Shown: positions 1 through 54,883 of the stretch, one piece after another
Layout: every line of letters starts with the position of its first letter
Position numbering within the stretch: position 1 is the stretch's first letter
Source: Octopus sinensis
Lineage: Eukaryota
Assembly (NCBI RefSeq): GCF_006345805.1
Contig: NC_043008.1
Span: 7,750,001-7,814,000 of the forward strand
Direction of reading: 5' to 3'
Length of the DNA: 64,000 nt
Notes under the pieces: generated by a model
The model's input: only the letters and a program-made list of their open reading frames with translations
Databases searched by the model: none
What the model was told of the DNA's origin: nothing
Made by a program: the position numbers and the translations under genes

Positions 1-4
1 CTCC

Positions 5-84
<80 letters not shown>

Positions 85-322
85 CAGATAGATAGATAGA
101 TAGACAGACAGATAGATAGATAGATAGATAGATAGATATATAGATAGATAGATAGACAGATTGATAGATAGATATATAGATAGACAGATAGATAGATAGA
201 TAGATATATAGATAGATAGATAGATAGATAGATAGACAGATAGATAGATAGATAGATAGATAGACAGATAGATAGATAGATAGATATATAGATAGACAGA
301 TAGATAGATAGATAGATAGATA
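5..322. repeat. (GATA)n microsatellite with GACA/TATA variants; 3' flank of the Tx1-like element
   Basis: Direct tetranucleotide repeat. Confidence 0.98.
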
Positions 323-663
323 TGTTTCTTTATTAGCCACACAGGGCTGCACACAGATAGAACAAATTACAAGGTAGAGCTTTTCTTTTGAAGGTTTAAA
401 AAATAAAAAAATAAAAAAATAAAAAAATAAAAAATAAAAAATAAAAAAAAATAAATAAATAAAATAAAATAAAAAATAAGAAAAAATAAAATAAAATAAA
501 AATAAAATAAAAAAGGGGGGGTCGATCAAAAGGGATCGTAAAAGGAGAGGAAGACAACAAAAAAAAAGGGGGGTTTAAAAAAAAAGGGGGAGAGGAAAAA
601 AATTGATCAATAGGGATCGTTATCACAGAAATGTCAATATGAAGTGTAAAGGGGGGGACAGGT

Positions 664-713
664 GAGGTTTACCCGTGGAAAGAAAAGCCTACGGAAAAGA
701 CCACGGTAACCTC
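664..713 (-). other. Stem-loop in the retrotransposon 3'UTR
   Basis: GAGGTTTACCCGTGG (664-678) pairs with CCACGGTAACCTC (701-713) with two single-base bulges. Confidence 0.6.
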
Positions 714-799
714 GGTCAATGAAGTCACATGTTATATTTCTTTTTTTTTTTTTTTTTTTTTTTTGCAAATAAGCAACTCTCTGTATTAATTTTTACGGT

Positions 800-3468
800 T
801 CATAGAATCATAGTCAAGGTGGCTTCGTCATTCATACGTGCCATCCTTGCTACATTCACCCATCTTTTTTTAAAACATTCACTAGACAAAACTTGCCTCT
901 CTACTCTCACTTTTTCTTCAAGTGATACTTGAAGAAGTTGATGAGAGATTGACCAGAGAGGAAAGTGTTTGTCTCTAATCCTTTCAGACGCGTCCACCAG
1001 AGATACATTCTTTCGCCATAGCCACAAGTATGATAAAAATAGCTCTTCCTTCCCGTTTGAAGGAAGGAGGCGTGACGATATTAACGATAGACTCGGCTGA
1101 TAAACCGACACGTCCCACACGTGACAGCAGTCGTTCGACATAAGCCCACAGGTGGGAAATTGCTGGACACTGCACGATTGCGTGCAGAGCGGTTTCGTCG
1201 CTCTGCCCGCATCTCGGGCAGTCGGCCCCGTGTTTCTCGAGCCATGCCTATAGAGCTTATCCCGAACGGGTAGCGCTTCTCGGTAGCACCGCCAGGCCAG
1301 GGATCTCTGGAGTTGTCCATAGGTCCCGGGCCGAAAGTCGTTTTGAAACAGGCGGGTCAGGTATTCCTCGTCGACGCCCAGGTTTGCCCCGAGCTCGTCG
1401 TCGTACCTCCCCTCCACTAATCCCCTATAGAATGCTTTGGTGTGTTGAAGTCACTCAAGGTCGACCCGGGACGGCAGAGTTGCTTGAGAGCAACGCGGAC
1501 ACTCGCGGTGCCATTCGCCCTTCTTCGGCCTCTTTTGATCCACGACTGTAGTTCGGTCATGGAGACGAGTTGCGGGAATGCGTGCCTCACAAACGGCGAC
1601 CACACCTGTTCACCGTCGTCTACATAGAGCCGGAGATGTCGCAGTCTCAGCGCGTGTCTGCGCATCATCAACCACGGCATGCCCAGCCCTCCTTTTAACG
1701 GGTGTTGACAGCAAATGGATCGCCTGACCATCGGGACGCATCCTTTCCACAAGAAGCGGAAGAGGATGCGTTTCTAGTTTGGTGATGGTAGGGTCGGGAC
1801 AAGGTACGACGGTCAGGCGGTAGTAGATGATGGACGCGATGTACGCGTTCACACCTCCGCCCGACCTTTTAGGGACAGTTTCCTCTCGGCCCATTGCTGG
1901 GAGAGAGTGACCACCCTACTCGTTATCTCGTTCCAGTTCTTCTCCATTTGGAGGTCCGGACCGAACCAGACCCCGAGCAACTCAACCGGGCCGTCTGTCC
2001 AGCGTCCCACGACGGAGGTACTGGTGGACGGCATGGGTTTGCTTCTCCAGGTGCCGAGCCGCAAGCCCACTGACTTTTCCCGGTTGATTTTTGCTCTGTC
2101 ACACCGCTTCGTAGTCTTTCAGTGTCTCGCCGACCGCTCGATGTGCTCGTGGCTTGACACTATGACGGTGACGTCGTCCGCGTATGCAGACACGCTCGTC
2201 CCGCATCCTAATTCTCGCGGGATGCCCTCAGAGTCGCCGGCTTCCGCATAGTAGTGGCTCAAGAGTCAATACGTATAGAAGCGCCGAGAGGGGGCATCCC
2301 TGACGGACCGAACGTGCAATGTCGAAGGGTCTGTTCATCTACCAGTGACCGAATGGTGGCTTTGTTGCCCTGTGTTGCGCCTCTGCCACCCGGGCCTCTC
2401 TCGCGGCTCCAACACCTTCGTTCCTTAGAGCACGCATCCTAGCTCTGACAGCACATCCTTCGTGTTTGGCGTTGAAGTGTTGTCGAGGGCCAACCTCGCC
2501 GCCAAAACGTCGGATGCGATGCCGCTTCTAATCTCTTCTAGCTTCAACTAGCTCACCCTCTACTCTATTTCTATCTATGGCTAGTGCTTTGCTGTACCTA
2601 ATCGCTCTGCTTTTACTGCTCTCTTGAGGCAAACCACCATTTGTTGTTGATGATGGCTCCCGTCAAGCCCTCTTTACTAGTGTGCTAATCCGGTCTCTGA
2701 AAACTTGTCTGGACGGGAATGATGCGTTCAGTTTCCCGTACCCAGGACCCTGTCTATGTGCCTTATCTAAGTCTAGCGTACACGTCACCAATTGTGATCC
2801 GTGTAGCTGACTGTGTGGAATTGTGGACATCCTAAGTTATCCTTGTCTACTGTCCTACACAGTATCCTATCTAGATACGATCTCGACGACCCACTGCGGT
2901 TGCTCCATGTCCACGTTGGTGCATTTGGGTGGTCGAGTCGGTACCTGTCAGACAGTTGGAATCGTCTGAGCAGGTCTCTGAGGCATTTGCATCCCCTTTG
3001 TTTCTGTCTCTACCCACGTAGTCTACATGCGTGTCCAAGGTAGCATTCCAATCCCCCACTAAGAGTAAAGGACGAGACGTTCCCAAGAATACTTCTAGGT
3101 CGAAAGAAATCCGCCCGACCTGTTAAGGGCGGTGCGTAGACTGATACGAGTCGAAAAGCGCACCCATTGCTGCCGTCAACATCCAGAACGATCAGTCTAC
3201 CCTCCGGGTCTACGAATATCGTCTTGACTTCGAGATCCAGGCTTGTGAAAAAGTACCGCGGTGCCACTACCGCCCATCCTCGGCAGACAGGGAGCGAAAT
3301 AAATGTTAAACTGTCCGCCAAACATGGACTTTAGGGCCCGTGGCTCGTGGAGTCTGGTCTCACTTATGGCTATGATTCCCAAATCATGTGACTTGATGTC
3401 ATTTAGGAGGTATCCTTGTTTCCAAGGAGACCCAAGCCACGCGCATTCACACAACCAATCTTGACCAT
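800..3468 (-). pseudogene. ORF2 of copy 1: APE endonuclease, RT (internal ~750-bp deletion at ~2330), C-terminal CCHC; multiple frameshifts
   Basis: MVKIGCVNARG, ISET, VYAP, GDWN, SYLD, TDH (APE); QGCPLS, YADD, LLGVWFG, GGLG (RT/thumb); CPRCGQSDETALHAIVQC at ~1165-1220; TGA at 800-802. Confidence 0.93.
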
Positions 3469-3519
3469 GATTCTATTGGGGGTGTGTGCTTTAAAACACA
3501 CAAATGAAAGTACAGAGAG

Positions 3520-5635
3520 TTACTTACTTGTGTCGAAAGTTTTGGCTTTCCTCGTTTGATGTCTTCGAGGAGGAGTTTCTATAGTTTTTGGGACAGAATT
3601 TCTGGAAACCACCCTACAGCATTTGGGGAAGAGGGCTTTGAGTTTGTGGTGTTGTGTTTGTGTGTGATGGTAGTATTTTGATGTGTTTGGGTGGTGTAGT
3701 GCGTGGATGATTGCTATTTTTAAAGTCATCTTCACAAATGTTTGTGTATCCTGTGATGTACTCCATTAGTTTGGAGTTTTTGTGTCTATCGCTGATAGCA
3801 TTGTTTTTGTGGTGTTGGTGCTTGTTTTGTTGTGTATGGAGTTTTCAGGGTTCAGGTATCTCCCTGCTTTGGTTGCGATTTCTTGTTTGGTTTTTCTTGA
3901 TCTTTTTTCTTTTAACCCCTGTGCTATTTGCCATTCTGTCGAACTTTCATCGTTAGATGAAAAGTCTGACGAATCAGCGGGGGCAAGGGTAAGGCGTCCT
4001 GGGTGTGTTTTGTTTGTGCGGTTGTAGATATTGTTGTGGTGCGCGGGGAGGGTGTTGCTGGGGGGTTTGTTGTGGTTATGTCTCTCCTACATCCTTGGTG
4101 CTTGTCTTCTTCGTTGTTATTCTTGGTGTTGGAATTGGTTTATTTGTTTGTGGTGGTGATGATTCTGTTCTTGGCGCTGGTGTTGGTGTTGTTTGGTTGG
4201 GTTGGTTTGTTCTTTTTGTGTTTTTCCTGCATTCCGCATACAGCTTCTGACTAGCTGTCCATATTGTGGTGTGGGCAATAATCTGGCTTTTGTGATTTTT
4301 CCTGTGGCTGTTGTTGTTGTTGTAATTTTGCGGCAGATTTGCACTCCTTTTTGAGGTGTGCCTCACTGCCACATGTATAGCATCGTGGCCTCTGCCCTCG
4401 ACTACTACTATATAACTTTGCGGCCATCCTCAAGATGTACGTGGGTGGGGATTTTATTTATGTCCTCTTGACTTATGTGGAAGAGGAACTCTATTCTCTT
4501 TCCCAGCCAGTCCTTGTTTTCCGAAACACCGATATCTAGGATGTTTATGTCCTCCATTTCGGATTTACGGCGGATGGATCCACAGTGTTGTAGTCACTTG
4601 GGGGACACCACTGATAATGACTTTCGTCACCTTCTGGCCGAGGTAACTCGGTTGTCAACGTTAGTTCATTCAGAATGAAGGGTTATCGTTGAGAATTTCT
4701 TCGCCAACTCTTCATTCTGAAAAACCACCTGTACGTGTGCGAAACTTGTTCGCCCAAGTCACACAATCCTTGTATCCCCAGATGGGGCGTAAGCACTTTT
4801 CGACTTTGTCTGTGCTTGCCTTTTCTGGACTTTTTGTTTTTTTATTTGTGATTTTATATACAATTGTCTTTTTTTTCTCCTCATTCAGTATGTGCTGAGG
4901 TATGTGTAAGAGTATTTTTCCGTTTTGATTTGTAATAAGGTTTCTGCAATCTTTAATCTGTTGTGTTGTAGTAAACGAAACTTTTGTTACCTTTTCTTTT
5001 ATCGCCTCGGCGAAGTTTGTTGTTGTTTGTTATTGTGTTACTGTGATGTTGATGGCAGGGGTGTGGTTGTAGGTTTGTGGTTGCTGATTATGCAAACTAG
5101 CAAGGGGTGGAAAATTCCTGCGTAATTTAGTCCTGCATTAGCGCAAATTTCGGCATTTCGTTTGCTTGTCGTCGTTATTTTTTCACTTGTTTGGTGATGG
5201 AGGTGAGCAGTGGTTGAAGGGAATTGTTGTTGTCGTCGTCGTCGTCGTTGTTGTTGTTGTTGTTTTGTGTTGTTATTGTCGTTCTTGGTGACGGCGGTGG
5301 TGTTAGTAAGTATTAGTAGCATTGACGGCACGGTCTTTGGTGGCGGTGATGGTGATGTTGGTATTGTTATTGGTGGCGACGTCTTTAGTAGGGGATAGCA
5401 GTTTTAGTAGCAGATTCTGCCATGGTGTTGTTGTCGGTGTTGGTGTGGTGGTGGACTCACTGATGGTGGTGTTGACGGTGCTTGGCCTTGCGACCTTGTT
5501 TTGTATTTGTTGCTGTTGTCGATGTTGTTGATGGTGGCGGAGTGTCAGGTTCAGCGTAAGGTAACAGAGCATCCTGTTTTCTGCCTCTGCGTCACGGTTG
5601 ACTTGCATCTCAGCCTCGTGGTGACCAGTGGCCAT
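3520..5635 (-). pseudogene. ORF1 (gag-like RNA-binding protein), frameshifted in this sequence
   Basis: Starts MATGHHEAEMQ (ATG 5635). Central HVQVVFQNEELAKKF...KVIISGVP segment resembles the Tx1 ORF1 RRM region. EGQRPRCYTCGSEAHLKKEC is a CX2CX4HX4C knuckle (~4340-4410). Thr/Gln/Asn-rich low-complexity flanks. Confidence 0.8.
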
Positions 5636-5857
5636 TTTGGAAATAAAATGGCTAAATGAAACCACGAAGGCTAGAGAATCTTTTCTTTTAAATTTTGCCC
5701 ACAAGGGGCAAAAATTTTGTGGAGATATTATCAAAGGTTTTACAGTGGATGTTGTCACAACTTTTAAAAACCCAAAATATTTCACAATAAGTAATTTTCA
5801 ACGTACAAAATGACCATTTTACGTGGAGCCCATTTGACTAGCGTCCGTCCGTCCGTC

Positions 5858-5863
5858 AGATAG

Positions 5864-5923
<60 letters not shown>

Positions 5924-5976
5924 CAGATAGATAGATAGATAGATCTATAGAATGATAGATAGATAGATAGATAGAC

Positions 5977-6062
<86 letters not shown>

Positions 6063-6070
6063 TAGATAGA
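5858..6070. repeat. (GATA)n array between the two retrotransposon units
   Basis: Direct repeat, same orientation as 5-322. Confidence 0.98.
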
Positions 6071-6153
6071 CGTATGCAGACACACTCGTCCCGCATCCTA
6101 ATTCTCGCGGGATCCCCTCAGAGTCGCCAGCTTCCGCAGTAGTGGCTCAAGAG

Positions 6154-7146
6154 TCAATACGTATAGAAGCGCAGGAGAGGGGCATCCCTGACGGACCGAA
6201 CGTGCAATGTCGAAGGTCTCGATAGATGTCCATTTACGCGAATTACCGAACGGATGCCTCTGTACAAGGCAGCTATCCAGCCGCGGAAGACGGGCCCGAA
6301 ACCAGCCGGTCTCAGGACTGCCTCCAAGTATCGATGGTCTACCCTATCAAAGGCTTTCGATTGATCCAAGTTGATCAGGGCCCCTCCCATGCCAGGTTCG
6401 TTAACTACCCTGTCTATGATGTAGCGCATCAGATGGAGGTTGTCATGGATGCTCCGGCCCGGCACGGCGCACGTTTGTGCGTTGTCGACCAGTTTCTCGA
6501 TGACAAGCGCCAACCTCTTGGCTAACGCCTTTGTCAAAATTTTCAGGTCTGCATTGAGCAGAGTGATTGGCCTAAAGTTATCTATAATGTTTCCCTTGTT
6601 TGGATCTTTCTTCAGCAGAGTTACAGCTCCTCGACTCACAAAACCGGGTATGCTCCCGTTTTGCTGCCAGTTGCAGTATACCGCTGCCAAGACGTCTCCA
6701 AACAAGTCTGGCATACAATAGTAAAATTCGTAGGGTAGACCATCCAAACCCGGTGATTTGTCCCTCGAGCATTCTGCCATCGCTTCCCGCACTTCCGCCG
6801 CCGTGATGGCACCTTCGCAGCACCCTGCCTTTCTTGTCGAGAGTCGTGGCAGGCTATGTAGGTAGGCACTGAAGTCTACCCTACGTTCTTGCCCTCCACT
6901 CGTCCCGAACAGTCGGGCAAAATGCTGCTGAAAAGCCTCACACATTTTATTTGGCTCGAGCAATTCGCGCCCCTGTTCATCTACCAGTGACCGAATGGTG
7001 GCTTTGTTGCCCTGTTGCGCCTCTGCCACCCGGGCCTCTCTCGCGGCTCCAACACCTTCGTTCCTTAGAGCACGCATCCTGGCTCTGACAGTACATCCTT
7101 CGTGTTTGGCGTTGAAGTGTTGGTCGAGGGCCAACCTCGCCGCCAA
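6154..7146 (-). CDS. Uninterrupted N-terminal RT-domain reading frame
   Basis: SPGLDGLPYEFY, FRPITLLNADLKI, GRSIHDN, LDQSKAFDRV; a frameshift near 6215 precedes QGCPLS. Confidence 0.88.
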   Translation of the reverse strand: MAARLALDQHFNAKHEGCTVRARMRALRNEGVGAAREARVAEAQQGNKATIRSLVDEQGRELLEPNKMCEAFQQHFARLFGTSGGQERRVDFSAYLHSLPRLSTRKAGCCEGAITAAEVREAMAECSRDKSPGLDGLPYEFYYCMPDLFGDVLAAVYCNWQQNGSIPGFVSRGAVTLLKKDPNKGNIIDNFRPITLLNADLKILTKALAKRLALVIEKLVDNAQTCAVPGRSIHDNLHLMRYIIDRVVNEPGMGGALINLDQSKAFDRVDHRYLEAVLRPAGFGPVFRGWIAALYRGIRSVIRVNGHLSRPSTLHVRSVRDAPLLRFYTY

Positions 7147-7380
7147 AACGTCGGATGCGATGCCGCTTCTAATTGCCTCTTCTAGCTTCTTAACTAGCTC
7201 ACCCTTCGTAGTCTTTCAGTGTCTCGCCGACCCGCTCGATGTGCTCGTGGCTTGACACTATGACGGTGACGTCGTCCGCGTATGCAGACACGCTCGTCCC
7301 GCATCCTAATTCTCGCGGGATGCCCCTCAGAGTCGCCAGCTTCCGCAGTAGTGGCTCAAGAGTCAATACGTATAGAAGCG

Positions 7381-8167
7381 CCGATGCCGCTTCTAATTGC
7401 CTCTTCTAGCTTCTTAACTAGCTCACCCTCTACTCTATTTCTATCTATGGCTAGTGCTTTGCTGTACCTAATCGCTTCTGCTTTTACTGCTCTCTTGAGG
7501 GCAAACCACCATTTGTTGTTGATGATGGCTCCCGTCAAAGCCCTCTTTACTAGTGTGCTAATCCGGTCTCTGAAAACTTGTCTGGACGGGAATGATGCGT
7601 TCAGTTTCCAGTACCCAGGACCCTGTCTATGTGCCTTATCTAAGTCTAGCGTACACGTCACCAATTTGTGATCCGTGTAGCTGACTGTGTGGAATTGTGG
7701 ACATCCTAAGTTATCCTTGTCTACTGTCCTACACAGTATCCCATCTAGATACGATCTCGACGACCCACTGTGGTTGCTCCATGTCCACGTTGGTGCATTT
7801 GGGTGGTCGAGTCGGTACCTGTCAGACAGTTGGAATCGTCTGAGCAGGTCTCTGAGGCATTTGCATCCCCTTCTGTTTCTGTCTCTACCCACGTAGTCTA
7901 CATGCGTGTCCAAGGTAGCATTCCAATCCCCCACTAAGAGTAAAGGACGAGACGTTCCCAAGAATACTTCTAGACGTCGAAAGAAATCCGCCCGACCTGT
8001 TAAGGGCGGTGCGTAGACTGATACGAGTCGAAAAGCGCACCCATTGCTGCCGTCAACATCCAGAACGATCAGTCTACCCTCCGGGTCTACGAATATCGTC
8101 TTGACTTCGAGATCCAGGCTCTTGTGAAAAAGTACCGCGGTGCCACTACCGCCCATCCTCGGCAGAC

Positions 8168-8169
<2 letters not shown>
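7381..8169 (-). CDS. Uninterrupted APE endonuclease reading frame (the ORF-track start in GATA repeats is spurious)
   Basis: [41 protein letters not shown] in the 7356..8435 ORF. Confidence 0.85.
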
Positions 8170-8222
<53 letters not shown>

Positions 8223-8223
8223 C

Positions 8224-8298
<75 letters not shown>

Positions 8299-8335
8299 CA
8301 GATAGATAGACAGATAGATAGACAGATAGATAGAC

Positions 8336-8418
<83 letters not shown>
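8165..8418. repeat. (GATA)n/(GACA) array, 5' flank of unit 2
   Basis: Direct repeat; overlaps the element end by AGACAG microhomology. Confidence 0.98.
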
Positions 8419-8419
<1 letters not shown>

Positions 8420-8685
8420 GGGCAGATTTATACATATATATGTATCGACATTTTAAAATGTGGGTATGTGTATTTATGCGTCTGCATGTATATATTAATT
8501 CGATATTGGTTTATCGTTACGATCGCTTATTATGGGTAGTTGCTACAATTTTTTTTTTTTTTGATTCTGTCTATTTTTCATAGGTAAACATAAATCTTAG
8601 CGATAAAATACAGAAAAAGAATGGAATATATACATGGGTGAGTGTGCAAGTGTATGTACGTACGTAAATACACACACACACACAC

Positions 8686-8725
<40 letters not shown>

Positions 8726-9487
8726 AATATATTAAATACGAGAAGTGAAATAGGGTGTGGGAGGGGGAATGCTGTGAAGTTAACCGAAAAGAAATAAAGG
8801 AAAAATGACTTCGTTATTCAAGTGTTTCATAGATAAACGTATTTAAAAAATGAGATATTAAGTAGATGTTAGAGAGGCTATACATCATGGCTCGTAGTTT
8901 GATATTAAACGTTTAGAATTCGATTTGTCGCTATGACTTAATCGATAAAACTATATAATTTCTGAGAAGGTCAAATGTTTCAGAGTTCAAAGTAGAAAGT
9001 GTAAGACGGGATATAATAATAATAAATCTTCAGATGACAATGGATAGGTTGTTGTGAAACATTCTTTTAACTAGAATTTTCTGTTTCTTTTATAAATGGA
9101 TCGCTTCGGCTTATGAAGCTCGGTTTTAGTCTACGGAACAACTTGTAACTCTTCTCATTTCCTTTTCTGTCGGCGTTTTCTCGTATCTGTCTCACATTCG
9201 TTTTCTACTGATTTCTTTTCCCCTCTCCCTCGCTATCTGTCCGTCTATACATTTATCTATCTATCTCTCAGTGTTAGTGTGGGGTTCTTCTGAAATAATG
9301 CTAAGGACCCTCGCATATAGATAATTGTATTAAATCGTTTAATAAGTGAATATTTCACTGCCCATGTCAAATGACTTTCCTTTTCGACTTGCTGATATAT
9401 CGAAAAACAGCGTAAGAGAGAGAAAACTTAAACATTCAAGGAGACATTCACTTACAATTATCATTTTACTATTCTTTTATTCGCTTA

Positions 9488-9675
9488 TTATTTTACTTGT
9501 TTCAGTGCCCACACTGGAACACACCATTGAAGCAATATAGTCGAACGAATCGACCCTGGTACTCAATTTTATGCCTTGTACTTATTCAGCCATATCGAAA
9601 TGCAAATGCTAGGCTATACGAAGATAAACAAACCAGCACCGGTTGTCAATCAGAGATGCTGGACGAGCACAGATG
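9488..9675 (-). mobile_element. 3' half of family-B (OR-like) SINE, diverged
   Basis: TTACTTGTTTCAG...AATCGACCC...CACCGGTTGTCAA matches the 3' half of the 38359 copy. Confidence 0.6.
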
Positions 9676-9772
9676 TAATGACTCTCTCTCTCATTCACTC
9701 TCACTGTCTCTCTCTCTCACACACACACACATTCATACACAAACGTACACACAGACACGCACATACATATAC

Positions 9773-9806
<34 letters not shown>

Positions 9807-9838
9807 TTGGGTGTGTGTGACTCTGTATAGAAGAATAT

Positions 9839-10053
9839 ATTCTTTTCTACTCTAGGCAGAAGGCCCGGATTTTTGGAGGAGGGGGCAATCGATTAGCTCA
9901 ACCCAAGTGCGTAACTGGTACTTATTTATTCGACCCCGAAATGATGAAAGGCAAATCCGACCCCGGCGGAATTTGAACTGAGGACGTAAAGATAGAGTAA
10001 ATACCGCTAAGCATTTCGCCCGGCGTGCTAACGTTTCTGCCAGTTCGCCGCCT
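9839..10053 (-). mobile_element. Family-A tRNA-SINE (OK-like)
   Basis: Reverse complement reads GGCGGCGAACTGGCAGAAACGTTAGCACGCCGGG...AGTTCAAATTCC (B box)...AAGTACCAGTTACGCAC. Confidence 0.9.
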
Positions 10054-11509
10054 TCTTATGAATATATCACCAAGTGTATGTGCACAAAACTTCAAAATAT
10101 TGAGTTGATACTGTTTCCTGACATTATGCCAATTCCAGCGTAGTTCTGTCTGATCTGTATTCAATCTGTATAATTCTTTAAAATTCATGACACCATATAA
10201 TATTTTAACTAAATGTCGTAGAAAAGGATGTTCGTTGATTTCAGCAAGTAATGTAAGAATGTGAAGTGTTTTATTTGTGTTTTATATTTCTAAACGGGTA
10301 ATCTGCACATCCAAGAATTCTGACTGGAATGCATAACCTTAATTTATTTGTATATTCAGCATAGAAATCTGCCATTAACGACGCGACATGTTTGATCAGT
10401 TTTCGATTTTATGAATCTTAATACAAATTCAACAATGCGTGTGTGTGGCGTGACCTGCGACACGAACAGATGTCATAAATCGAAACACCTTCAACGCCAC
10501 CCCCAAAACCACCACCACCAACAACAACAACAACAACAACACCAACACCAGAACCGTATCTTCCCTGTTATTCCATTCCTTGCCATACTACCATCGCTGC
10601 CATCATTGAAAAACCTCTTCCCTTCTTGTACTTATTTCGTTATCCAACCATTCTTTTCTACTTCTTTAAGTCACCACCTTGTGAGATTGTTTACTTAACA
10701 ATGTTCCATAGTTTTCCATTATTGATACAGATATTATAGAACACGGTTTAGCAATTACATATATATGTTTTAAAGTCTTATTCCGTTATAAACTTATTCT
10801 TATTCCTTATTATCTATTTCTCACCAATCTAATTCCTATTGTCTTCATTTTATTCCAACGAGAGCAGCATTAAGTTCCTAGGATTGACCTTTTCCTTCAT
10901 AGTATTTAAATATGCAATTCAGAGAGGAAATTTGTTAGATTTAAACTTCGACTCAGTTTCCCTGTAAGTACACGTCAATGATATATAACCGCATGCATGC
11001 GGCGCGCACACATGCAATACACACTCGCAAGCATGCATCTAGTCAGAGAGACGCAGACAGATAAACAGATAATTAGGCAGATGTATGCACACACATTTCC
11101 TTGAATTTTCTGCATTATTTGCTTCTGGAATTAACCTATCGAGATATTCAACAGCTCCCTTCACACACACACGCACATATAGATACACAATCACACACTC
11201 TCACAGACACTCGCATACACAATCCTATGATTTCGTTCATTTATGCATGGGACAATGCCTTTATACTCTTTCATCATACAATTCGTTGATTCCCTTTGTA
11301 ATGGACGTTTTCCAAGGGATTATCTTCAAGAGATTATTTGCAGGGATTACCTCGATTCTAATTACGCTAAGTTATGAATAACAATGAATAATTAAGGCAC
11401 GTGACTTAACATGACTTTCATTAAAGCAATACATTGAATAATAAGCACAGATTACATATATGAACGTTAAGCAGATATTGTTACTATCATGCATATATAT
11501 ATATTATAT

Positions 11510-11562
<53 letters not shown>

Positions 11563-12060
11563 GTATATGATTCTGATGTATATTTTCCAGTAACATAAAG
11601 CTATGATAATGTTTCTTATTTAAAACAAAAGAGAACACATTATCAATTTATTTTATTAATGATATAATTGAATTCTGAGGATCAATCCCGTAATTATGCC
11701 ATTACGGTTTATTCAGCGGTTCTGTCATCTGTCATTTGTCTCTTTAATCCGGCGAGAATAAAGCCTGTTTTCATTTCAACGAACAATACAATATTGCCCG
11801 TATATTTTGATCAACGCCATTTTTACTCGTGATTAGATTCAGATATTATCTGTTCTGATACACGCATATTGCGATGATGAATAATAAACCACATAATTAA
11901 ATGAGTTCTTGTTAGCATAATTAGTCTGTAACTCATTATTGAAAAAATGTCGTCCTTAATTAGTGCATCTATGATGCGGGTAGAGCTTCTGATGTTACCG
12001 GTTGCCCAGCTAAATAGAGAAGTCCGGGGTCATGCAACAACAATCACCAATATTAAATTT

Positions 12061-12292
12061 AGGCGGCGAGCTGGCAGAAACGTTAGCACGCCGGGCGAAA
12101 TGCGTAGCCGTATTTCGTCTGCCGTTACGTTCTGAGTTCAAATTCCGCCGAGGTTGACTTTGCCTTTCATTCTTTCGGGGTCGATAAATTAAGTACCAGT
12201 TACGCACTGGGGTCGATGGAATCGACTTAATCGCTTTCTCTGTCCTTGTTTGTCCCCTCTGTGTTTAGCCCCTTGTGGGTAGTAAAGAAATA
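12061..12292 (+). mobile_element. Family-A tRNA-SINE (OK-like), full length
   Basis: GGCGGCGAGCTGGCAG A-box region, GAGTTCAAATTC B box, 3' tail shared with the 56692 copy. Confidence 0.93.
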
Positions 12293-12692
12293 AACATTAA
12301 CTTCTCTCGTAGTTTCGATGAACCACAATATGATAGCTCCCCATATCACAGGAAGGGTGTAGCCACGAATATACTAAATGGATCAAGTTAGATTAATCTG
12401 AATAACTTCCCAAATACAAACTAATTATGAAGAGATATGAAATTCAAACTTTTTTTACTATTTACCTTAATTTTGTTTTCCCTTTTGTAAAACACGTTTA
12501 GGTAAACTTTGCAATAACTCACTTAAAAGAAAAATCAACAACGAAATTTGTTACCAAGAATGTTTGTAAGTGAAATACATAAACATTTACAAACATTTAC
12601 AAATAAGAACGACTAATGGCTTATAAAAAAGTAAAGTAATCTGTATAAGAGAAATTAGTATTCGGTTAATAATAGCGGTGAAACAAATACTG

Positions 12693-12732
<40 letters not shown>

Positions 12733-12738
12733 TATATA

Positions 12739-12800
<62 letters not shown>

Positions 12801-13800
12801 TATATATATATGTCTGTGCGTGTGTTTGTATGTATGCGTTTAAATATATACATACATCCATCCATACGTACATGTGTATACATGGACACACACCTACGTA
12901 GGAATACCTGTGCGTGTGCCTGTACGTGTGCGTGTGTGCGTCTATGTACAAGCACGTCTATTATATACACCCTTATTCTTTACAATACAAACAGCGCTAA
13001 ATCCCAATCGAATTTGAGCAAATGGTTGCAATTGCTTTTGTAAACACGCAGAGAGCATTAAAACGGCTGCCTTCCATTCATTATCTTTTATACTTAAAAA
13101 TAACGCAATAGTCCCTTGAAGGGCCTTTAGAATTAAAATTGAATCACAACGGTTGATCATTGAATGCTTTTCTTTATCCTCATTGCGTTCTGATTTTTTT
13201 TGCTCTTCCATTGGAAATATATTTCTTTATTTCTCAATATACTGCTTACTTGAATCTCATGAACTTGAAGTGTACACGGGTCTTAGAGTCTCAGAAATCA
13301 AAAAGAACTAGAAGCTCTGATTCCTTTGATCAAACCATTCATTGAATACCACATGAAAAGCTCGCAAATCTCCTGCGAATAATCGTCGTCGAATTATTCA
13401 TCTTGTTCTGCTTCTGCAATGACAACATTTGATTTATCAAATTCTAAAATTCAGATAATAGTGTTCGTATAAACAAAAATAATTATATAAAAATTGTATC
13501 TCGACAACAGAAAAAAAGGAAAAAAAATAGTGATTGAGGAGAAAAACAAGTAAATTAAACGAAAGCTTTAAAAAATTCACTCTCCTTGTTCATTAATGAA
13601 TTAAATTTGCCATTAGACAAACCAAATTGAATTTACAGGACATAAATTAATGAAAAGCAAAAAATGAGTAAAGAAAACAAAAATTAATTGTTTAATCTTT
13701 ACTTTATTATAAATTGCATCAACGATGGGATTTTTTAAAACTCCAATAACATTTTAGACCCAACCGTTTACTGTTCATAATGAAGTCTGAATGGTGCACA

Positions 13801-13806
13801 CATACA

Positions 13807-13903
<97 letters not shown>

Positions 13904-14075
13904 ACGCACGCACACTCGCTCACGCATACGCAACTGTTCTGAAACTAAGACATTTACACACATTCTCTGTCTATATAAATATGCAAACGCACACACACAC
14001 ATACACACATACGCAAACACACATACACATACATATATATATACGTACGTATACGTGTATGTGCGTGTGTGTATA
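13801..14075. repeat. (AC)n-dominated microsatellite
   Basis: Direct repeat; source of the HTHT/VCVC ORFs. Confidence 0.95.
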
Positions 14076-14529
14076 TAAATAATTGAATTGCGCGTCTTTC
14101 ATCAAGTAGCGATCAGCACAGCTAAGTCGGGGCAGTGAAAGATTTAATTTATTATTCTACTTTCATGAAATATCGCATATTTATTACTTTCGAGAGATTA
14201 AATTGTTAGTTAATGTTAGTAAATGACGATAATAAAGCGGCATATATTTAACATTTTAAACCCGGCAGACATGTGATATGGGACTTACAATATCGATTTA
14301 CTTCAATTATTCTGGCTTTTCATTATTTAAATACTATCCGAAAGATGCGGAGGGAAAGCGATGAGACTCGTTTAGGAGATAAAAAAATTACAATAAATAC
14401 TTATGTCTCTTTAGCCTCTGAACCAAGTTCCGGAGAAGTTTGCTTCGTTAGTAATTAGGATTTCATTGTTGTGTCCTCAATAAATTAAGTATCTGTAAAT
14501 TATTCGAGGTTATTCCATCAACTTTAATA

Positions 14530-14715
14530 CTTTCTACTATAGGCGCAATGCCTGGAATTTTGGGCGACGGGGTCAGTCGATTTGATAAAACTCCAGTACG
14601 TAACCGGTACTTAATTTATCGACTCCGAAATTATAAAACGCAAAGTCGTCCTCGCGGAATTTGAACTCAGGGCGTCGCGAAGGGCGAAATACTGTTAATC
14701 ATTCCGTCCCGCGTG
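14530..14715 (-). mobile_element. Family-A SINE, diverged, head truncated at the adjacent palindrome
   Basis: GGTACTTAATTTATCGAC...GGAATTTGAACTCAG matches other copies. Confidence 0.8.
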
Positions 14716-14990
14716 TTAATCATATCCCATCATCGGAGACGGTGTGAGAGGAAAAATTAAGTCTTAGTTAGTTTCGATGTGATGCAAAACAGAGAGTGAG
14801 ATGGAGGAAAGAAAATAGATGTAAGATATTTATGGGTTTTGAATTTGTAAATCCGTTTACAAATTCAAAACCAATACGTATCTTACATGTATTTTATTTC
14901 CTCCACCTCACTCTCTCTTTTGCATCACAATCTTTCGTCTCCGATGAAGGGATATTATTAATTAATATCCTAGAAACAGCTGTAAGACCT
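14716..14990. mobile_element. Fold-back (inverted dimer) element ending in a hammerhead-like motif
   Basis: Arms 14716-14851 and 14856-14961 are reverse complements around a TCCG loop; the left arm has a ~34-nt insertion. Confidence 0.85.
14937..14988 (+). ncRNA. Minimal type I hammerhead ribozyme-like motif (U4C core variant)
   Basis: GTCT / CCGATGA / stem II GGATATT..AATATCC / GAAA-C-AGCT-G-TA / AGAC. Stem I GTCT:AGAC, palindromic AGCU loop III, GUA triplet. Confidence 0.7.
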
Positions 14991-15263
14991 TCTATCTATA
15001 AATGCTCTAATATCTATACAGCCTTGTTTTTTTTATCTTATTATGCAAAAAGTCATTATATACACACGCTGACATAGAACCAATGTTGAACCATTTATTC
15101 GTAATAGTACCGAATCTGGAACTTAACTATCGTCTGTTTATAGAACTTATTCTGCAATACCTGACAACTTTGGGTCTCAACGATACCACACACACATACA
15201 CACAAACACACACACATACACACACACGCACGCACATACACACACACGCACATACACACACAA

Positions 15264-15340
<77 letters not shown>

Positions 15341-18331
15341 CAGTGTATGAGAGAAGGGATATATACATAACATTTTACAATTTGTATGAAATATATATTG
15401 TGAATATTCTATAAAGAAAATGAACTACAGGAGATACACATAGCTTTCAAGCATTTTATCATGTGTGTTAGGAGATATATCCAATTCTGAATAATGGAAA
15501 ACCTTTCCAAAAAAGATATCTTCCTTGTAAGGATCGATTATATTAAGAATTGCCACCACGAAAATGTTATTTCAGATTCTCGTAGACTTTGCAGTTCCCA
15601 GGTGTTTCCGTCAGATGCGATGGGTGTCTCTTCTATTTGTTTTCTACAGTCAGTTAGGTCCCTGGTAGATGCTCTGCATGAAATAACACAGAAAGCAAGC
15701 GAGTATTGTTAATCAGCTGCATTTAATAAACACCTCATGAATCACATCTTGGTTTGTTTCTGTCGGCACCGGGAAAAAATATTCCAAGCGTTACAAAGGT
15801 CACAGTGAATCCGGTTTGAATATGTATTTTTTTAATTATAAAGTGATATTTTGCCACTCTTATATCTATCTTTGTACGACTCTTGTCGCGCTGATTTTTT
15901 TTATATTCCGAAATCGTAGATAGGATTTGCCTGGCTTTTATCTTCAAAGAGTCGGATCCTGATAACGTCCACTTCGTATCAGAGTATAATTACTATATCA
16001 GCACAGACACGACTGTCAACACAGTTTAACACGTACTCTCTGGATACTGGCCGACGTTACCTTACTTATAGTGACTGCGTCATTCCACTCGTCACGTGAG
16101 AGGTTGTACCATTCATTACTAATCCACTACAACATTTTTTTTGTGTGTACTTCTTTAAAAGAACAAGGTGTACAATGAGACATTACCGCAAACTACTTCG
16201 GTGAGTGAACTTCTTTCTTCTTACTTACTCCTATCTCGTAATGAGAAGCTTGATACAAAATAGAAAATAACTCTTCACAGTTATTTAGAACATATGATGC
16301 TTCTCATATTCATCTACGGACTTTATATCTTTGAGCGGCGATACCCGAGGCATAGTGGATTTATCTCTTGTCCACGTCCCCTAATCTCCAGTTCAGCGAA
16401 CAATATTTTGCTTAATTATGCATCATTTCTAGAGAATAATAGATTCATAAGTTTCTTTGAATCCGGTAAGTATTGCCACCAAGCGGTCCTTCTCCAATCT
16501 CTAGATTCGCTTTAGATATATCAAGATCTTTTAATTCTTTACTATTTAATATATATTTTTCATCATTCACTTCCAAATATACGCCATCCATCGCTGTGAT
16601 TTATTTCTCTTAGGTACTTTTCGTTTGTCCAATGGAAGTTTTCTAGGATATAAATATATTCTACTGTCAATATGAATCCTTTTTGGGGTATTGGTGAGAT
16701 GATGGCGTTTTACTCAGGCACAAACACCGTGCATACATGCAGACGCTCTTCTGTCCAGTCAATATTTTGATTAACGGTGTGCTAATTTTTGAATCTTGCT
16801 GTTTATCCCCATTTCTCATTTGGAGTTGGTGCCTATTGTACCACGCAATTAGTAAAGGCTTTCTCTCATTGTTGAACTCAGTGTATTAAGAATGGGCTTT
16901 ATAAGTATACACACAAAAACACAAAAACGCATATAGACGCACACACGCTTATTTGATGGGTGGATTAATTTCTGTATGTGTGTGTGTTTCTCTGTTTATA
17001 CGCGTGTTTCTGTTTTAGATTGAAACATCTTCAGAAGTATTTTGTATGACAACCTGCGAAAATTTCTGCAAAGAATCTGAAGTTTCCCAATTTTGCTTCC
17101 TCACTTTTCTAACCTTATTATAAACTTAAGTTTGCTCTTTCTACCCAGAAGGTAATCATTTCATATTTCCTTCGAATCTCTATAAGACATTATAAGTTGG
17201 TTCGTCCTGCTTGGTACAGCAAATTTCTTTCCCGTCAGAAGCAATATTTTATTAAGAAATGAGGTATATTTCAACGATCTTTGATGAAAAAGATCAAATG
17301 TTTACGGTCTTCTAGGCAAAGTTGACATTTAGGTAAGCGACAGAAGTAGTAGAAACTCATTTTTCATAATATGGGTTACATTTTTCTTCGGTTTTCTGTT
17401 ACCATGCATTACTAGTAGGAAACAAAATGAAAGTTTTCAACATTTTCGTACAGAATATTTAGAAATATGCTCCCTTTTCCAGTCTGGCTTGTTCTAGTCA
17501 CACTACACAAAACTGAGAAAACTTTATAATGATCCCTGTCGTGGAGAATGGACTCTGGGATCATCATCTTGTCCACCGACTTCTAAAAGAACATATTTCT
17601 CTAAACAATATTTTGCTTCTACTGGAAATAGACAATTAGCTCCTTGATTCATCGGCTTAATTTATAGAAAGCATTATTAAATCAATGTAATATGATATTT
17701 TGTAATATACAACACAAAAGGGACTATGCGCCAGAGAGTCCAGTGTGTGACGGAGTTTCCTTTAAACTTTGCTTATGCTTAAATACAAAGAAAAAGCAGA
17801 AAAGAAAACATACATTATCACATTTAGTAATATACCAAATCACAAATTCCATTTCGTCCTCTGTACATATTGACTATTTTTCCTATATTTCTCTAGGCTA
17901 AAGAAAAAACATTCATGAATAACCTTCTGGCGCCTTGCGGTTAATAGAGCGTTTCGAATTATGGAAGAAGTGATTTTACTTTACATATAATATGGATTTA
18001 AACTTGTTCCTCATATGATGCCAATGCTATAATTTCTGTTATGGCAGCAAAAAGAAATAAAAGTTACATATTTACATAACATACTTCTTTGCATATAAAA
18101 AATATGTGCAGAACACGGTTTACTCAAATGACAGGAATATTTGAGCTCCATTTCTACATGTTATAACATTTCAGCAGGTCTACATTACGATGTAGCAGAG
18201 ACACAAGTTTATACAATACTTTATTATGTAGCAGTTGGAAAGCTTGCTAAAGATACGATATTATATTAGTTTTAAGTCCTGTAAACGCACCTTCATGAGT
18301 AATAAGAGTATTTAACTACTTTATGCATTAA

Positions 18332-18727
18332 CTAGCAGTGTCGCCCAGCGTTGCTCGAGTTTATTTCGACCCTTTAGAATTGAAGTTTTTGAAAAGTAAA
18401 ACATTTGCATTATGTAGCTTTTTATTCTCTTTAAGTGACCATTTTTCTGGTTGAAACACACCGAAAAATGGCGACACAGCGGTCAAAAAGTCGTAAAAAA
18501 TAGGGATTTTCATAGAAAAAAAGCACCTTTTTGATGTAAGTAATTTTTGGTGTTAACATTGTTCGATTTGAAATTTTTCGTCAACGGAAGGAAGAGCAAG
18601 CCTTCTTCTATCATACTCTCAATTTTGGTCAACTTGCGCTGTAGGGTCACGGATGAGATAGTGTTAGTTGAAGGCTACCAAACCTGCCATACACAGACCC
18701 GTTCAGCTTTGTATATATAGAGAGAGA
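18332..18727 (-). mobile_element. Non-autonomous Helitron (~396 bp)
   Basis: Minus strand starts TC (18727), ends with an imperfect GC-rich hairpin (CGAGC-AAC-GCTGG) then CTAG (18332); inserted between A and T with no TSD. Confidence 0.8.
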
Positions 18728-19390
18728 TTGATTACAGAAGAAATATAGCTCTCCCGTCACCTGATAAATATATGGCTAATTTCAATCCTGGGGTTCTATC
18801 TCTTCGATGTTCCAACGGCTTTGATGATATACTTCATATTCCTGCCAGCTTTCGACCGATTATCGCAACCGTATGCGTACTAAGAATTCTACATTTACAT
18901 GTTGCATTTTAAAGCATTGTTTACAGTACTAATTGGAACCCATTTCTAGAGGGATATATGAGCCGTGAGTTATGATTACATTGTATCCTATTGTAGACAA
19001 TGTTATATTAATTCTGACTACACTGGCGAAAGATGAAAATATTCTCAGGAATGCAACACTGCTCCAATAGTTATTCTTTAAAACGAGCGTCTCCAACAGG
19101 CTTTGATTACCCAAGGAATACATTTTACACTTTTAGAATCGTGGCAAGGGAAGACAAACATGTTCAAAATAAGTTCATAGCCGGACAGCGTGCGAGATAA
19201 TGTTTATTTTAATTTTAAGCATGGCAATGAATTAAAGAATCTGCCAAAATAAAACATTGTGATATTAGGTAGCATCATTGTTGTCCACGGTATTTCTCCA
19301 GAAACATGAGAGTCGATAAAATCAAATCTAACACTGAAGACTGTGTAGTTTCCTTTTTATCGAATTAGGAGAGTATAGTTGAGTGTACTG

Positions 19391-20071: not shown

Positions 20072-20231
<160 letters not shown>

Positions 20232-22390: not shown

Positions 22391-22477
22391 GAGTTTCAGG
22401 TTGGTAATTCACTTATACATATATACATGCATACGTTATGTATGTATATATATATCTATCTATCTATCTATCTATCC

Positions 22478-22514
<37 letters not shown>

Positions 22515-34659: not shown

Positions 34660-35040
<381 letters not shown>

Positions 35041-41869: not shown

Positions 41870-42629
41870 AAGAAAGGAAGGTTTTTTCAAAGCAATAAAA
41901 TCAAATCTGACGCATTGATTTGTAATTAAAATTCATCAAGCTTACCACAGCGTGCTATTGAGCAGACACTATATTTTCTCTGTCTTTTTTTATTCTATTT
42001 ACCCCTCTTTCATTTTTTTCTTTTCTCTTTCTTTCTTTCTTTCCTTCTTCCTACCTTTCGCCCTTTCTTTAAGAAACAAAATTGACATCTTGAAATTTCG
42101 TTAGAATCAATCACCTGTGAAAAACTACTGAACATTCCTTTTCTCACTGCTTTTATTTCACTTTCTCTCTTCGCCTTCTTTGTGTTAGCTTTTCTTCTCC
42201 TCTTTTTTACTCTTTTTTTAAAACTCTTTTCCCATGTACAAACACGTATAGATAACAAGACAAAACAATACCCATCCTCTTACAGACTTGTATAACAGGC
42301 AAAGAAATGTTCTATAAAGCGTTTATCTAAGGAGTCTCGATGAATGAGATAAAAGCGCTACTAATGTATTATTCAAAATTCTACATCCTTTCTCAATATG
42401 TAAAATAAGGTACTCCACTTTAAACAGTCTGTACAGACACGCACGCTGACACAGACACACACACACCATTTTTACAATCAGAAGTCAGTTTACCTGGCGA
42501 AACCAATCCAGTTGTTAATAAGAAGGGTTCAAATTAAAGCACGCAAAATTCCACAACATCACTCATTCATAGTCAGGTTATGAACATTTCATCCCACCCA
42601 CGTAGCTAAATAGATAGATAGATAGATAG

Positions 42630-42692
<63 letters not shown>

Positions 42693-54765: not shown

Positions 54766-54883
<118 letters not shown>

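What the first reader, a model, noticed from the sequence alone, without database searches (positions are those of the whole stretch)
1..8418. Tx1-like LINE that appears to target (GATA)n microsatellites
Seen: all four outer junctions (322/323, 5857/5858, 6070/6071, 8169) fall into (GATA)n arrays of the same orientation. The 3' end reads AATAAAGAAACAT-ATCTATCT with no poly(A), and unit 2 stops at an AGACAG microhomology with the array. Established: several Tx1-group L1 elements are sequence-specific through their APE domain (Keno, U2 snRNA; Dewa, tRNA arrays; Kibi/Koshi, TC/TTC-type microsatellites). Inference: a GATA-specific family in a cephalopod, which I do not recognise as described. It would use an abundant microsatellite as a safe harbour.
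Basis: partly seen in the sequence, partly recalled or inferred. Interest (0 to 1): 0.88.

Follow-up and report, generated by a model that had tools for sequence, protein, structure and literature searches.

The report
LINE retrotransposon sitting in GATA repeats
A young L1/Tx1-type jumping gene of a cephalopod lies inside a long GATA microsatellite, and its relatives in the paper nautilus end at the same repeat, so it probably aims at GATA repeats: a new target for a known kind of element, seen so far in only four insertions.

Summary
Three same-orientation (GATA)n/(GACA) arrays (6-322, 5858-6070, 8164-8419) bracket two minus-strand pieces of one LINE. Copy 1 (5857->323) is near full length and lacks 753 bp of the RT core. 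Unit 2 (8169->6071) is a rearranged fragment cut at both ends.

The element has ORF1 with a CCHC knuckle and ORF2 with APE, RT and a zinc finger. Its best solved relative is human L1 ORF2p. Its closest protein relatives are cephalopod (Argonauta hians 56-58%).

In an Argonauta locus, two relatives only ~71% identical to each other both end with the same motif, GTGGCTAATAAAGAAA(CAT), joined directly to (ATCT)4 or (ATCT)14. Both sit between identical flanks: 26 nt ending in TATC upstream, and 160 nt at 98.75% identity downstream. These look like independent hits on one TATC-containing site.

Targeting of GATA/TATC repeats is therefore the best reading, but it rests on four insertions at two loci. 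Argonauta keeps only 1-2 TATC units on the 5' side, and a sister contig carries the 3' motif without ATCT. Tx1 membership rests on published octopus trees, not on a tree made here.

No GATA-targeting LINE turned up in the searchable literature; Repbase and Dfam could not be checked. Verdict: a new member of a known kind, of moderate interest.

The parts
6..322 (.). (GATA)n array with GACA, TATA and GATT variant units. It is the 3' flank of copy 1 and runs off the window start.
   Evidence: TRF; unit listing
323..799 (-). 3' UTR of copy 1, about 480 nt and rich in low-complexity runs. It ends ...GTGTGGCTAATAAAGAAACAT directly against the array. AATAAA lies 7 nt from the end and there is no poly(A).
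   Evidence: Sequence. The terminal motif is conserved in Argonauta copies A and B and in L006.
800..3468 (-). ORF2 remnant of copy 1, with many frameshifts and a 753-bp RT-core deletion at about 2331/2332. APE lies at about 3468-2800, beginning MVKIGCVNARGLG at 3468. RT fragments lie at about 2560-1850. The zinc finger (CPRCG...H...C) lies at 1247-987. The stop codon is at 800-802.
   Evidence: Frame map; ORF list; Pfam zf-RVT; copy 1 versus unit 2 map
3520..5635 (-). ORF1 remnant of copy 1. The start is MATGHHEAEM at 5635. A CCHC zinc knuckle (CYTCGSEAHLKKEC) lies at about 4390-4340. The region also holds low-complexity stretches. The lower boundary is approximate.
   Evidence: Pfam zf-CCHC 20.8 bits, at the cut-off
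5636..5857 (-). 5' UTR of copy 1. On the sense strand it begins (GACG)4CTAGTC immediately after the array.
   Evidence: Sequence. For comparison, the Argonauta 5' ends begin (TGTC)4 and (CATC)4.
5858..6070 (.). (GATA)n array between copy 1's 5' end and unit 2's broken RT end. Units are irregular next to both junctions.
6071..8169 (-). Unit 2, a LINE fragment cut at both ends. The partial APE (8168-7359) is a 270-codon open frame lacking roughly the first 70 residues. The RT N-terminal half (7215-6157) is a 353-codon open frame that includes the core missing from copy 1. A displaced 176-bp segment (7206-7381) equals copy 1 positions 2102-2287 and is flanked by a 48-bp duplication (7158-7205 = 7382-7429).
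   Evidence: Against copy 1 there are 10 substitutions and 21 indel events in 1364 columns.
8164..8419 (.). (GATA)n/(GACA) array upstream of unit 2's 5'-truncation point. It shares the 6-nt AGACAG microhomology (8164-8169). Unique sequence follows from 8420 and no LINE lies upstream.
   Evidence: (D10)

Best explanation
Identity. This is a young family of L1-group LINE, very probably of the Tx1 clade, in a cephalopod. It integrates preferentially, in one fixed orientation, at GATA/TATC tetranucleotide repeats. The window shows one large GATA/GACA microsatellite hit by one near-full-length copy (now lacking its RT core) and by a second, 5'-truncated copy that was later rearranged.

Proposed mechanism (steps 1-4 are inferred, not shown):
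1. The poly(A) signal AATAAA lies 7 nt before the element's end, so transcripts should run into the flanking repeat and end in (AUCU)n.
2. The ORF2 endonuclease nicks the GATA strand of an array.
3. The freed ...GATA-3' end pairs with the (AUCU)n tail of the RNA and primes reverse transcription exactly at ...GAAACAT. This would explain the absence of poly(A) and the constant junction.
4. The 5' end is joined by microhomology, such as AGACAG in unit 2. Array then remains on both sides in the same orientation.

Shown: the anatomy, the junctions, and conservation of the 3' motif-plus-repeat across two species.
For: - Both 5' junctions and the one canonical 3' junction in the window lie in same-orientation arrays. 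GATA/TATC runs make up only about 0.3% of the rest of the window and are unoccupied.
- The array upstream of the 5'-truncated unit 2 (8164-8419) has no LINE before it, so it cannot be another copy's tail.
- All three arrays carry GACA variants, right up to copy 1's 3' junction. This fits one old array that was split, not a freshly made tail.
- In Argonauta hians locus L001, two copies only ~71% identical in nucleotides both end GTGGCTAATAAAGAAA(CAT)+(ATCT)4 or (ATCT)14.
- Both Argonauta copies are preceded by the same 26 nt ending TATC, and followed by the same 160 nt at 98.75% identity. The flanks are far more alike than the elements, which indicates independent insertions at the same TATC-containing site.
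- The sense strand reads TATC in 4 of 4 insertions.
- Domain content and L1 affinity.
- Copy 1 and unit 2 differ by only about 0.7% in substitutions, so the family is young.
Against: - Only four insertions at two loci were seen. No census was possible, because the source genome is not in the searchable collections.
- In Argonauta only 1-2 TATC units remain on the 5' side, so an own (ATCT)n tail plus a specific non-microsatellite site cannot be excluded there.
- Unit 2's 3' end is a break inside RT with no microhomology to the array. It is not a TPRT junction, so one of the 'four junctions' says nothing about targeting.
- Contig L006, a sister lineage, has the same terminal motif followed by GATTATTAC.
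- More distant cephalopod relatives (L007, L010) show no TATC arrays.
- Differences between the two window copies are dominated by indels, 21 against 10 substitutions. This points to a noisy long-read consensus, so some of the odd structure could be assembly error.
Confidence: 0.6

Rival explanations
1. The (ATCT)n is the element's own 3' tail, as in many LINEs that end in a short tandem repeat. It would be made or extended by the reverse transcriptase. Arrays on the 5' side would be tails of neighbouring copies, or expansions of them, and copies would pile up head-to-tail because a tail offers homology for the next insertion.
For: - The repeat is always 3' of the conserved terminal motif.
- Argonauta copies keep 4 and 14 units at the 3' side but only 1-2 at the 5' side.
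- Argonauta copy B starts 400 bp after copy A's tail.
- The window's middle array lies 3' of unit 2.
- Related cephalopod and limpet LINEs also occur in tandem clusters.
Against: - Unit 2 has no canonical 3' end, so the middle array is not its tail.
- The 256-bp array upstream of unit 2's truncation point has no element before it.
- The 3'-flanking array of copy 1 is at least 317 bp and impure right up to the junction.
- If a tail drives insertion into matching repeats, the result is still repeat targeting.
Confidence: 0.2
2. The real target is a particular interspersed repeat that happens to contain TATC, as Xenopus Tx1L inserts into Tx1D transposons. The window's long GATA array would then be a secondary or atypical site.
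For: Both Argonauta copies lie between the same 26-nt left flank and 160-nt right flank, although the copies themselves are only ~71% identical.
Against: - The only visible outer boundary in the window (8420 onward) bears no likeness to the Argonauta flanks. BLAST of that flank region against the window finds nothing.
- The shared left flank is only 26 nt.
- No RNA gene or tRNA is detected in it.
- What the two species share is the TATC repeat.
Confidence: 0.12
3. There is no targeting. On this view a LINE landed by chance in or beside a large microsatellite. Later microsatellite expansion, deletions or long-read mis-assembly then produced the array-element-array-fragment-array picture.
For: - Both copies are rearranged.
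- Indel-dominated differences suggest an error-prone consensus.
- All window junctions belong to a single locus.
Against: - The same terminal motif is joined to the same repeat in an independent assembly of another species, twice.
- GATA/TATC arrays cover only about 0.3% of the remaining window.
Confidence: 0.08

Closest known systems
Koshi and Kibi (Tx1 clade, teleost fishes), and crocodilian Tx1 families that insert in (TTCC)n/(TTTC)n
   Same: They are APE-type L1-group LINEs found inside a microsatellite, with the repeat on both sides and no poly(A) (PMC3812793; PMC4494074). In a published tree, octopus L1-group LINEs are sister to the group holding KoshiTn1 and Tx1_XT (PMC10294476 supplement).
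   Different: Their targets are TC, TTC, TTCC and TTTC, all pyrimidine-only on one strand. Here the repeat is GATA/TATC, with GACA variants. The host is a mollusc. Specificity here rests on four insertions, not on a census.
Tx1L of Xenopus laevis, which inserts into Tx1D transposons
   Same: A LINE of the same clade is found at one specific site inside another repeated element (PMC4494074). The Argonauta copies likewise sit at one site between conserved repeated flanks.
   Different: The Argonauta flanking repeat is uncharacterised, and its shared left arm is only 26 nt. The window copy lies in a plain long microsatellite.
Dong (R4 clade, TAA repeats), Waldo (R1 clade, ACAY), Mino (AC) and Togen (NeSL-related, TG)
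   Same: They use the same strategy of inserting into an abundant simple repeat (PMC3812793; PMC4640811).
   Different: They belong to other LINE clades, some with a restriction-like endonuclease, and they target other repeat units.
LINEs with their own microsatellite 3' tail (for example I, CR1 and L2 types; own knowledge)
   Same: A short tandem repeat directly follows a conserved 3' end, with no poly(A).
   Different: In those elements the repeat is only at the 3' end and the 5' flank is unique. In the window both 5' junctions are in long arrays.

Membership tests
L1 group of APE-type LINEs | ORF2 carries an N-terminal apurinic-type endonuclease followed by a reverse transcriptase | tested here: met
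   Pfam Exo_endo_phos 4e-10 and RVT_1 2.7e-13 on unit 2 pieces. Relatives give the same domains.
L1 group of APE-type LINEs | The RT is closer to L1 ORF2p than to other LINE groups | tested here: met
   In the PDB search, human L1 ORF2p scores 1.2e-22 against 8.6e-11 for the best R2 protein. The APE piece matches L1 endonuclease structures. Only solved structures were compared, so other APE-type clades are not represented.
L1 group of APE-type LINEs | A cysteine-rich zinc-binding motif lies C-terminal to the RT, and a separate ORF1 lies upstream | tested here: met
   zf-RVT scores 20.6 bits, below the cut-off, in the window and 36.3 bits, above the cut-off, in sister contig L006. ORF1 has a CCHC knuckle at the cut-off score and no L1-type Transposase_22 hit.
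Tx1 clade | The RT groups with Tx1, Keno, Koshi and Kibi references in a phylogeny | not tested
   No labelled Tx1 reference sequences could be obtained. Length limits of the protein search excluded them, and the stored alignment supplement lacks them. Indirect support comes from published work. Octopus L1-group LINEs are classed as Tx1 and sit next to KoshiTn1 and Tx1_XT (PMC10294476 supplement files 6 and 10). O. vulgaris lists L1-Tx1 as its only L1-group type (PMC13282606).
Microsatellite-specific LINEs (Kojima's criterion) | The same repeat is seen in the flanks of more than 20% of copies (criterion in PMC4494074) | tested here: inconclusive
   4 of 4 insertions have TATC at both junctions in the same orientation. 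However, n is 4 at two loci, and two of them have only 1-2 units on the 5' side.
Microsatellite-specific LINEs (Kojima's criterion) | The 3' end joins the repeat directly, without poly(A) | tested here: met
   The window and Argonauta copy B read GAAACAT|ATCT. Argonauta copy A reads GAAA|TCTATC.
Microsatellite-specific LINEs (Kojima's criterion) | The endonuclease cleaves the repeat specifically | not testable with these tools
   This needs a nicking assay.
LINEs with an own 3' microsatellite tail | The repeat is only at the 3' end, the 5' flank is unique, and target-site duplications enclose element plus tail | tested here: not met
   In the window both 5' junctions lie in arrays of 213 and 256 bp. 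In Argonauta the point is ambiguous, because only 1-2 units lie 5'.

The most novel reading that the evidence does not exclude
An old cephalopod Tx1 lineage, shared by the window's species and Argonauta, has kept a conserved 3' end (CCCTTGTGGCTAATAAAGAAAC) and a specificity for GATA/GACA repeats. That would make it the first LINE known to target this tetranucleotide. Its 5' UTR begins with its own tetranucleotide repeats, (GACG)4, (TGTC)4 or (CATC)4. These might serve to join the 5' end to the array.
Probability: 0.4. Interest if true: 0.6.

Novelty: new member of a known kind. Interest (0 to 1): 0.45.

Why it matters
Sequence-specific LINEs show how a mobile element can persist without damaging genes, and they are being explored for targeted gene insertion. 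A GATA-specific family would add a new target, mixed in purines and pyrimidines, to a clade whose known microsatellite targets are pyrimidine-only on one strand. It would also give a second animal phylum in which to compare endonuclease loops with target choice. For cephalopod genomics it would mean that part of the GATA microsatellite load and part of the L1-Tx1 load are linked.

Tried and rejected
- Metagenome scan for the 20-nt 3' motif: one chance hit in an AT-rich protist-like contig.
- Viral-contig scans by protein and by DNA: nothing related, and one chance phage hit.
- Second protein search, with the 729-aa Argonauta ORF: only two hits, so it was wasted.
- APE search: four hits, only one on a contig longer than 1.2 kb (L006), which lacks the 5' end.
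- Exact look-up of L006's ORF2: the same contig only.
- Whole-library HMMER search: 31,573 relatives at E up to 0.001. Only the Argonauta protein and short Logan fragments exceed 50% identity. Names were uninformative.
- More distant relatives L004, L007 and L010: no TATC arrays at their ends, so they say nothing about GATA targeting.
- Rfam and tRNA scans of the Argonauta flanking repeat and of the L010 spacer: nothing.
- Consensus RNA fold of the conserved 3' end: only a 3-bp stem and no covariation, so no structure is claimed.
- Reference RT sequences for a Tx1 tree: one paper has no held supplements, and the other paper's alignment file lacks the Tx1 rows in the stored part.
- Internal priming as the origin of unit 2's 3' break: rejected, because there is no complementarity between the array and the sequence that follows the break in copy 1.
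- The Argonauta flanks as part of the LINE: rejected, because they are 99-100% identical while the elements are ~71% identical.
Full report
**What is in the window**

TRF finds three period-4 arrays at 6-322, 5858-6070 and 8164-8419. All read GATA on the + strand and carry scattered GACA variants. The left array also has a few TATA and GATT units.

Between the arrays lie two pieces of one LINE, both on the minus strand.

Copy 1 runs from 5857 down to 323:
- 5' UTR, 222 nt.
- ORF1, starting at 5635, with a CCHC knuckle.
- ORF2, from 3468 to the stop at 800-802, with an APE domain, RT fragments and a CPRC...H...C finger.
- 3' UTR, about 480 nt, ending GGCTAATAAAGAAACAT directly against ATCTATCT. 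There is no poly(A).

Copy 1 lacks 753 bp of RT core and is broken by many frameshifts.

Unit 2 runs from 8169 down to 6071:
- It starts inside the APE domain at a 6-nt AGACAG overlap with the array (D10).
- It contains the RT core that copy 1 lacks.
- It has a displaced 176-bp segment flanked by a 48-bp duplication.
- It stops abruptly in the middle of RT.

No other copy occurs in the 64 kb. The other GATA/TATC runs, about 184 bp in 55.6 kb, are empty compound microsatellites. One caveat applies: 6070/6071 is a break, not a LINE terminus.

**Age and quality**

Over 1364 aligned columns, copy 1 and unit 2 differ by 10 substitutions and 21 indel events. That ratio is the reverse of normal divergence and points to an error-prone long-read consensus. 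Real divergence is about 0.7%, so the family is young. Part of copy 1's decay may be artefact.

**What kind of element**

- Pfam gives Exo_endo_phos, RVT_1, zf-CCHC (at the cut-off) and zf-RVT (below the cut-off here, above it in a relative).
- Among solved structures, human L1 ORF2p is clearly best for the RT, at 1e-22 against 1e-10 for R2. L1 endonuclease structures are best for the APE piece.
- The nearest proteins are an unnamed metagenome fragment (68%), Argonauta hians (56-58%) and Acanthosepion pharaonis (43%). A cephalopod host is well supported.
- I could not obtain labelled Tx1 references, so no tree was built. Published work classes octopus L1-group LINEs as Tx1, next to KoshiTn1 and Tx1_XT (PMC10294476 supplement). 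It also lists 13 recently active L1-Tx1 families in Octopus vulgaris (PMC13282606). 'Tx1-like' is thus likely but indirect.

**Evidence from a second species**

The Argonauta hians locus L001 holds two relatives on one strand, A (about 4573-12790) and B (about 13210-18858). They are only ~71% identical to each other in nucleotides.

- 3' ends. Both end with the window's motif, GTGGCTAATAAAGAAA(CAT), joined directly to (ATCT)4 in A or (ATCT)14 in B.
- Downstream flank. Both are then followed by the same 160 nt at 98.75% identity.
- Upstream flank. Both are preceded by the same 26 nt, TTTTTCTTGTCTGTAAAACTCTATC.

The flanks are far more alike than the elements. These are therefore independent insertions of two subfamilies into the same TATC-containing site of a repeated sequence, not a duplication of element plus flank. 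That is good evidence for site choice. It also shows that the 3' motif-plus-ATCT junction is conserved between species whose ORF2 proteins are about 55% identical.

All three 5' ends begin with about four copies of a tetranucleotide:
- (GACG)4 in the window.
- (TGTC)4 in A, where it is part of a 157-bp 5' UTR monomer present twice.
- (CATC)4 in B.

**Limits**

- In Argonauta only one or two TATC units lie 5' of the element. There the data fit a short TATC run inside a specific repeat as well as they fit 'any GATA array'.
- L006, a 3.9-kb consensus-like contig at 62% APE identity, has the same terminal motif but continues GATTATTAC before the contig ends.
- More distant relatives in a cuttlefish and in two ENA assemblies have no TATC arrays at their ends.
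- The source genome is not in the protein or contig collections. The metagenome and viral scans gave only chance hits.

**Target or tail**

A pure own-tail model predicts a repeat only at the 3' end. In the window, copy 1's 5' end abuts 213 bp of array. The 5'-truncated unit 2 abuts 256 bp of array, with unique DNA and no LINE beyond it. The array 3' of copy 1 is at least 317 bp and impure up to the junction.

These points favour insertion into a pre-existing array. An RNA whose 3' end runs into (AUCU)n would in any case favour integration at nicked GATA repeats, so the two models converge on repeat preference. They differ in whether the endonuclease itself is specific, which only an assay can tell.

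I put the targeting reading at about 0.6, the own-tail reading at about 0.2, a specific composite-repeat target at about 0.12, and chance or artefact at about 0.08.

**Mechanism proposed (inferred)**

1. AATAAA lies 7 nt from the end, which makes transcripts end in the flanking repeat.
2. The APE domain nicks the GATA strand.
3. The ...GATA-3' end pairs with the (AUCU)n of the RNA and primes cDNA synthesis at ...GAAACAT.
4. The 5' end is joined by microhomology.

Unit 2's RT-internal break shows no complementarity to the array. It is best seen as a later deletion or rearrangement, or as an assembly fault.

**Comparison and novelty**

Microsatellite-specific LINEs are well known:
- Kibi (TC), Koshi (TTC), Dong (TAA), Waldo (ACAY) and Mino (AC) (PMC3812793).
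- Crocodilian Tx1 families in TTCC/TTTC (PMC4494074).
- Togen in TG (PMC4640811).

None of the papers I could search reports GATA as a target, in cephalopods or elsewhere. Repbase and Dfam entries could not be inspected.

If confirmed, this is a new member of a known kind. It is a neat addition for transposon specialists rather than a surprise. The score is 0.45.

Noticed in passing
L001:4543-4567 and 13185-13209; L001:12806-12965 and 18915-19074: An uncharacterised Argonauta repeat flanks both LINE copies. The left arm is 26 nt (100% identical between the two) and the right arm is 160 nt (98.75%). No RNA gene or tRNA is detected in it. It may be the preferred landing site there.
   Followed up: partly
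L001:4579-4659 and 4736-4816: The 5' UTR of Argonauta copy A is built of 157-bp tandem monomers, each starting with (CTGT)n. This resembles the monomeric promoters of mouse L1.
   Followed up: partly
L010 (ENA ERZ26052130 ctg11195c), whole locus: Three copies of a related cephalopod-type LINE, one with an intact 1153-aa ORF2, lie head-to-tail with a period of about 7.6 kb. A T-rich spacer of about 0.9 kb separates them. The contig is flagged circular. It could be a tandem LINE array or an assembly loop.
   Followed up: partly
Patella caerulea proteins KAK6191799-KAK6191823 (cluster of P0137): At least 12 near-identical LINE ORF2 genes carry neighbouring locus tags (SNE40_003393 to 003415) on one chromosome of a limpet. 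This suggests a tandem cluster of a relative at 38% identity.
   Followed up: no
window 323-8169: Differences between the two LINE copies are mostly 1-3-bp indels (21 events against 10 substitutions). This is a sign that the assembly consensus is error-prone here.
   Followed up: yes
window 20186-20229, 22453-22512, 42613-42787, 54768-54811: Short GATA/TATC runs are embedded in compound microsatellites with (AT)n and (CT)n. None carries a LINE end.
   Followed up: yes
window 34683-34796: A trinucleotide (CAA/TTG)-type repeat matches the low-complexity (TTG)n stretch inside ORF1 (5224-5290). The likeness is repeat-level only.
   Followed up: no
window 742-772 (minus strand): A run of about 30 A on the sense strand lies just after the ORF2 stop, inside the 3' UTR. 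It is followed by about 420 nt of further UTR. The UTR is much longer than in the Argonauta copies (180-260 nt) because of low-complexity expansions.
   Followed up: partly
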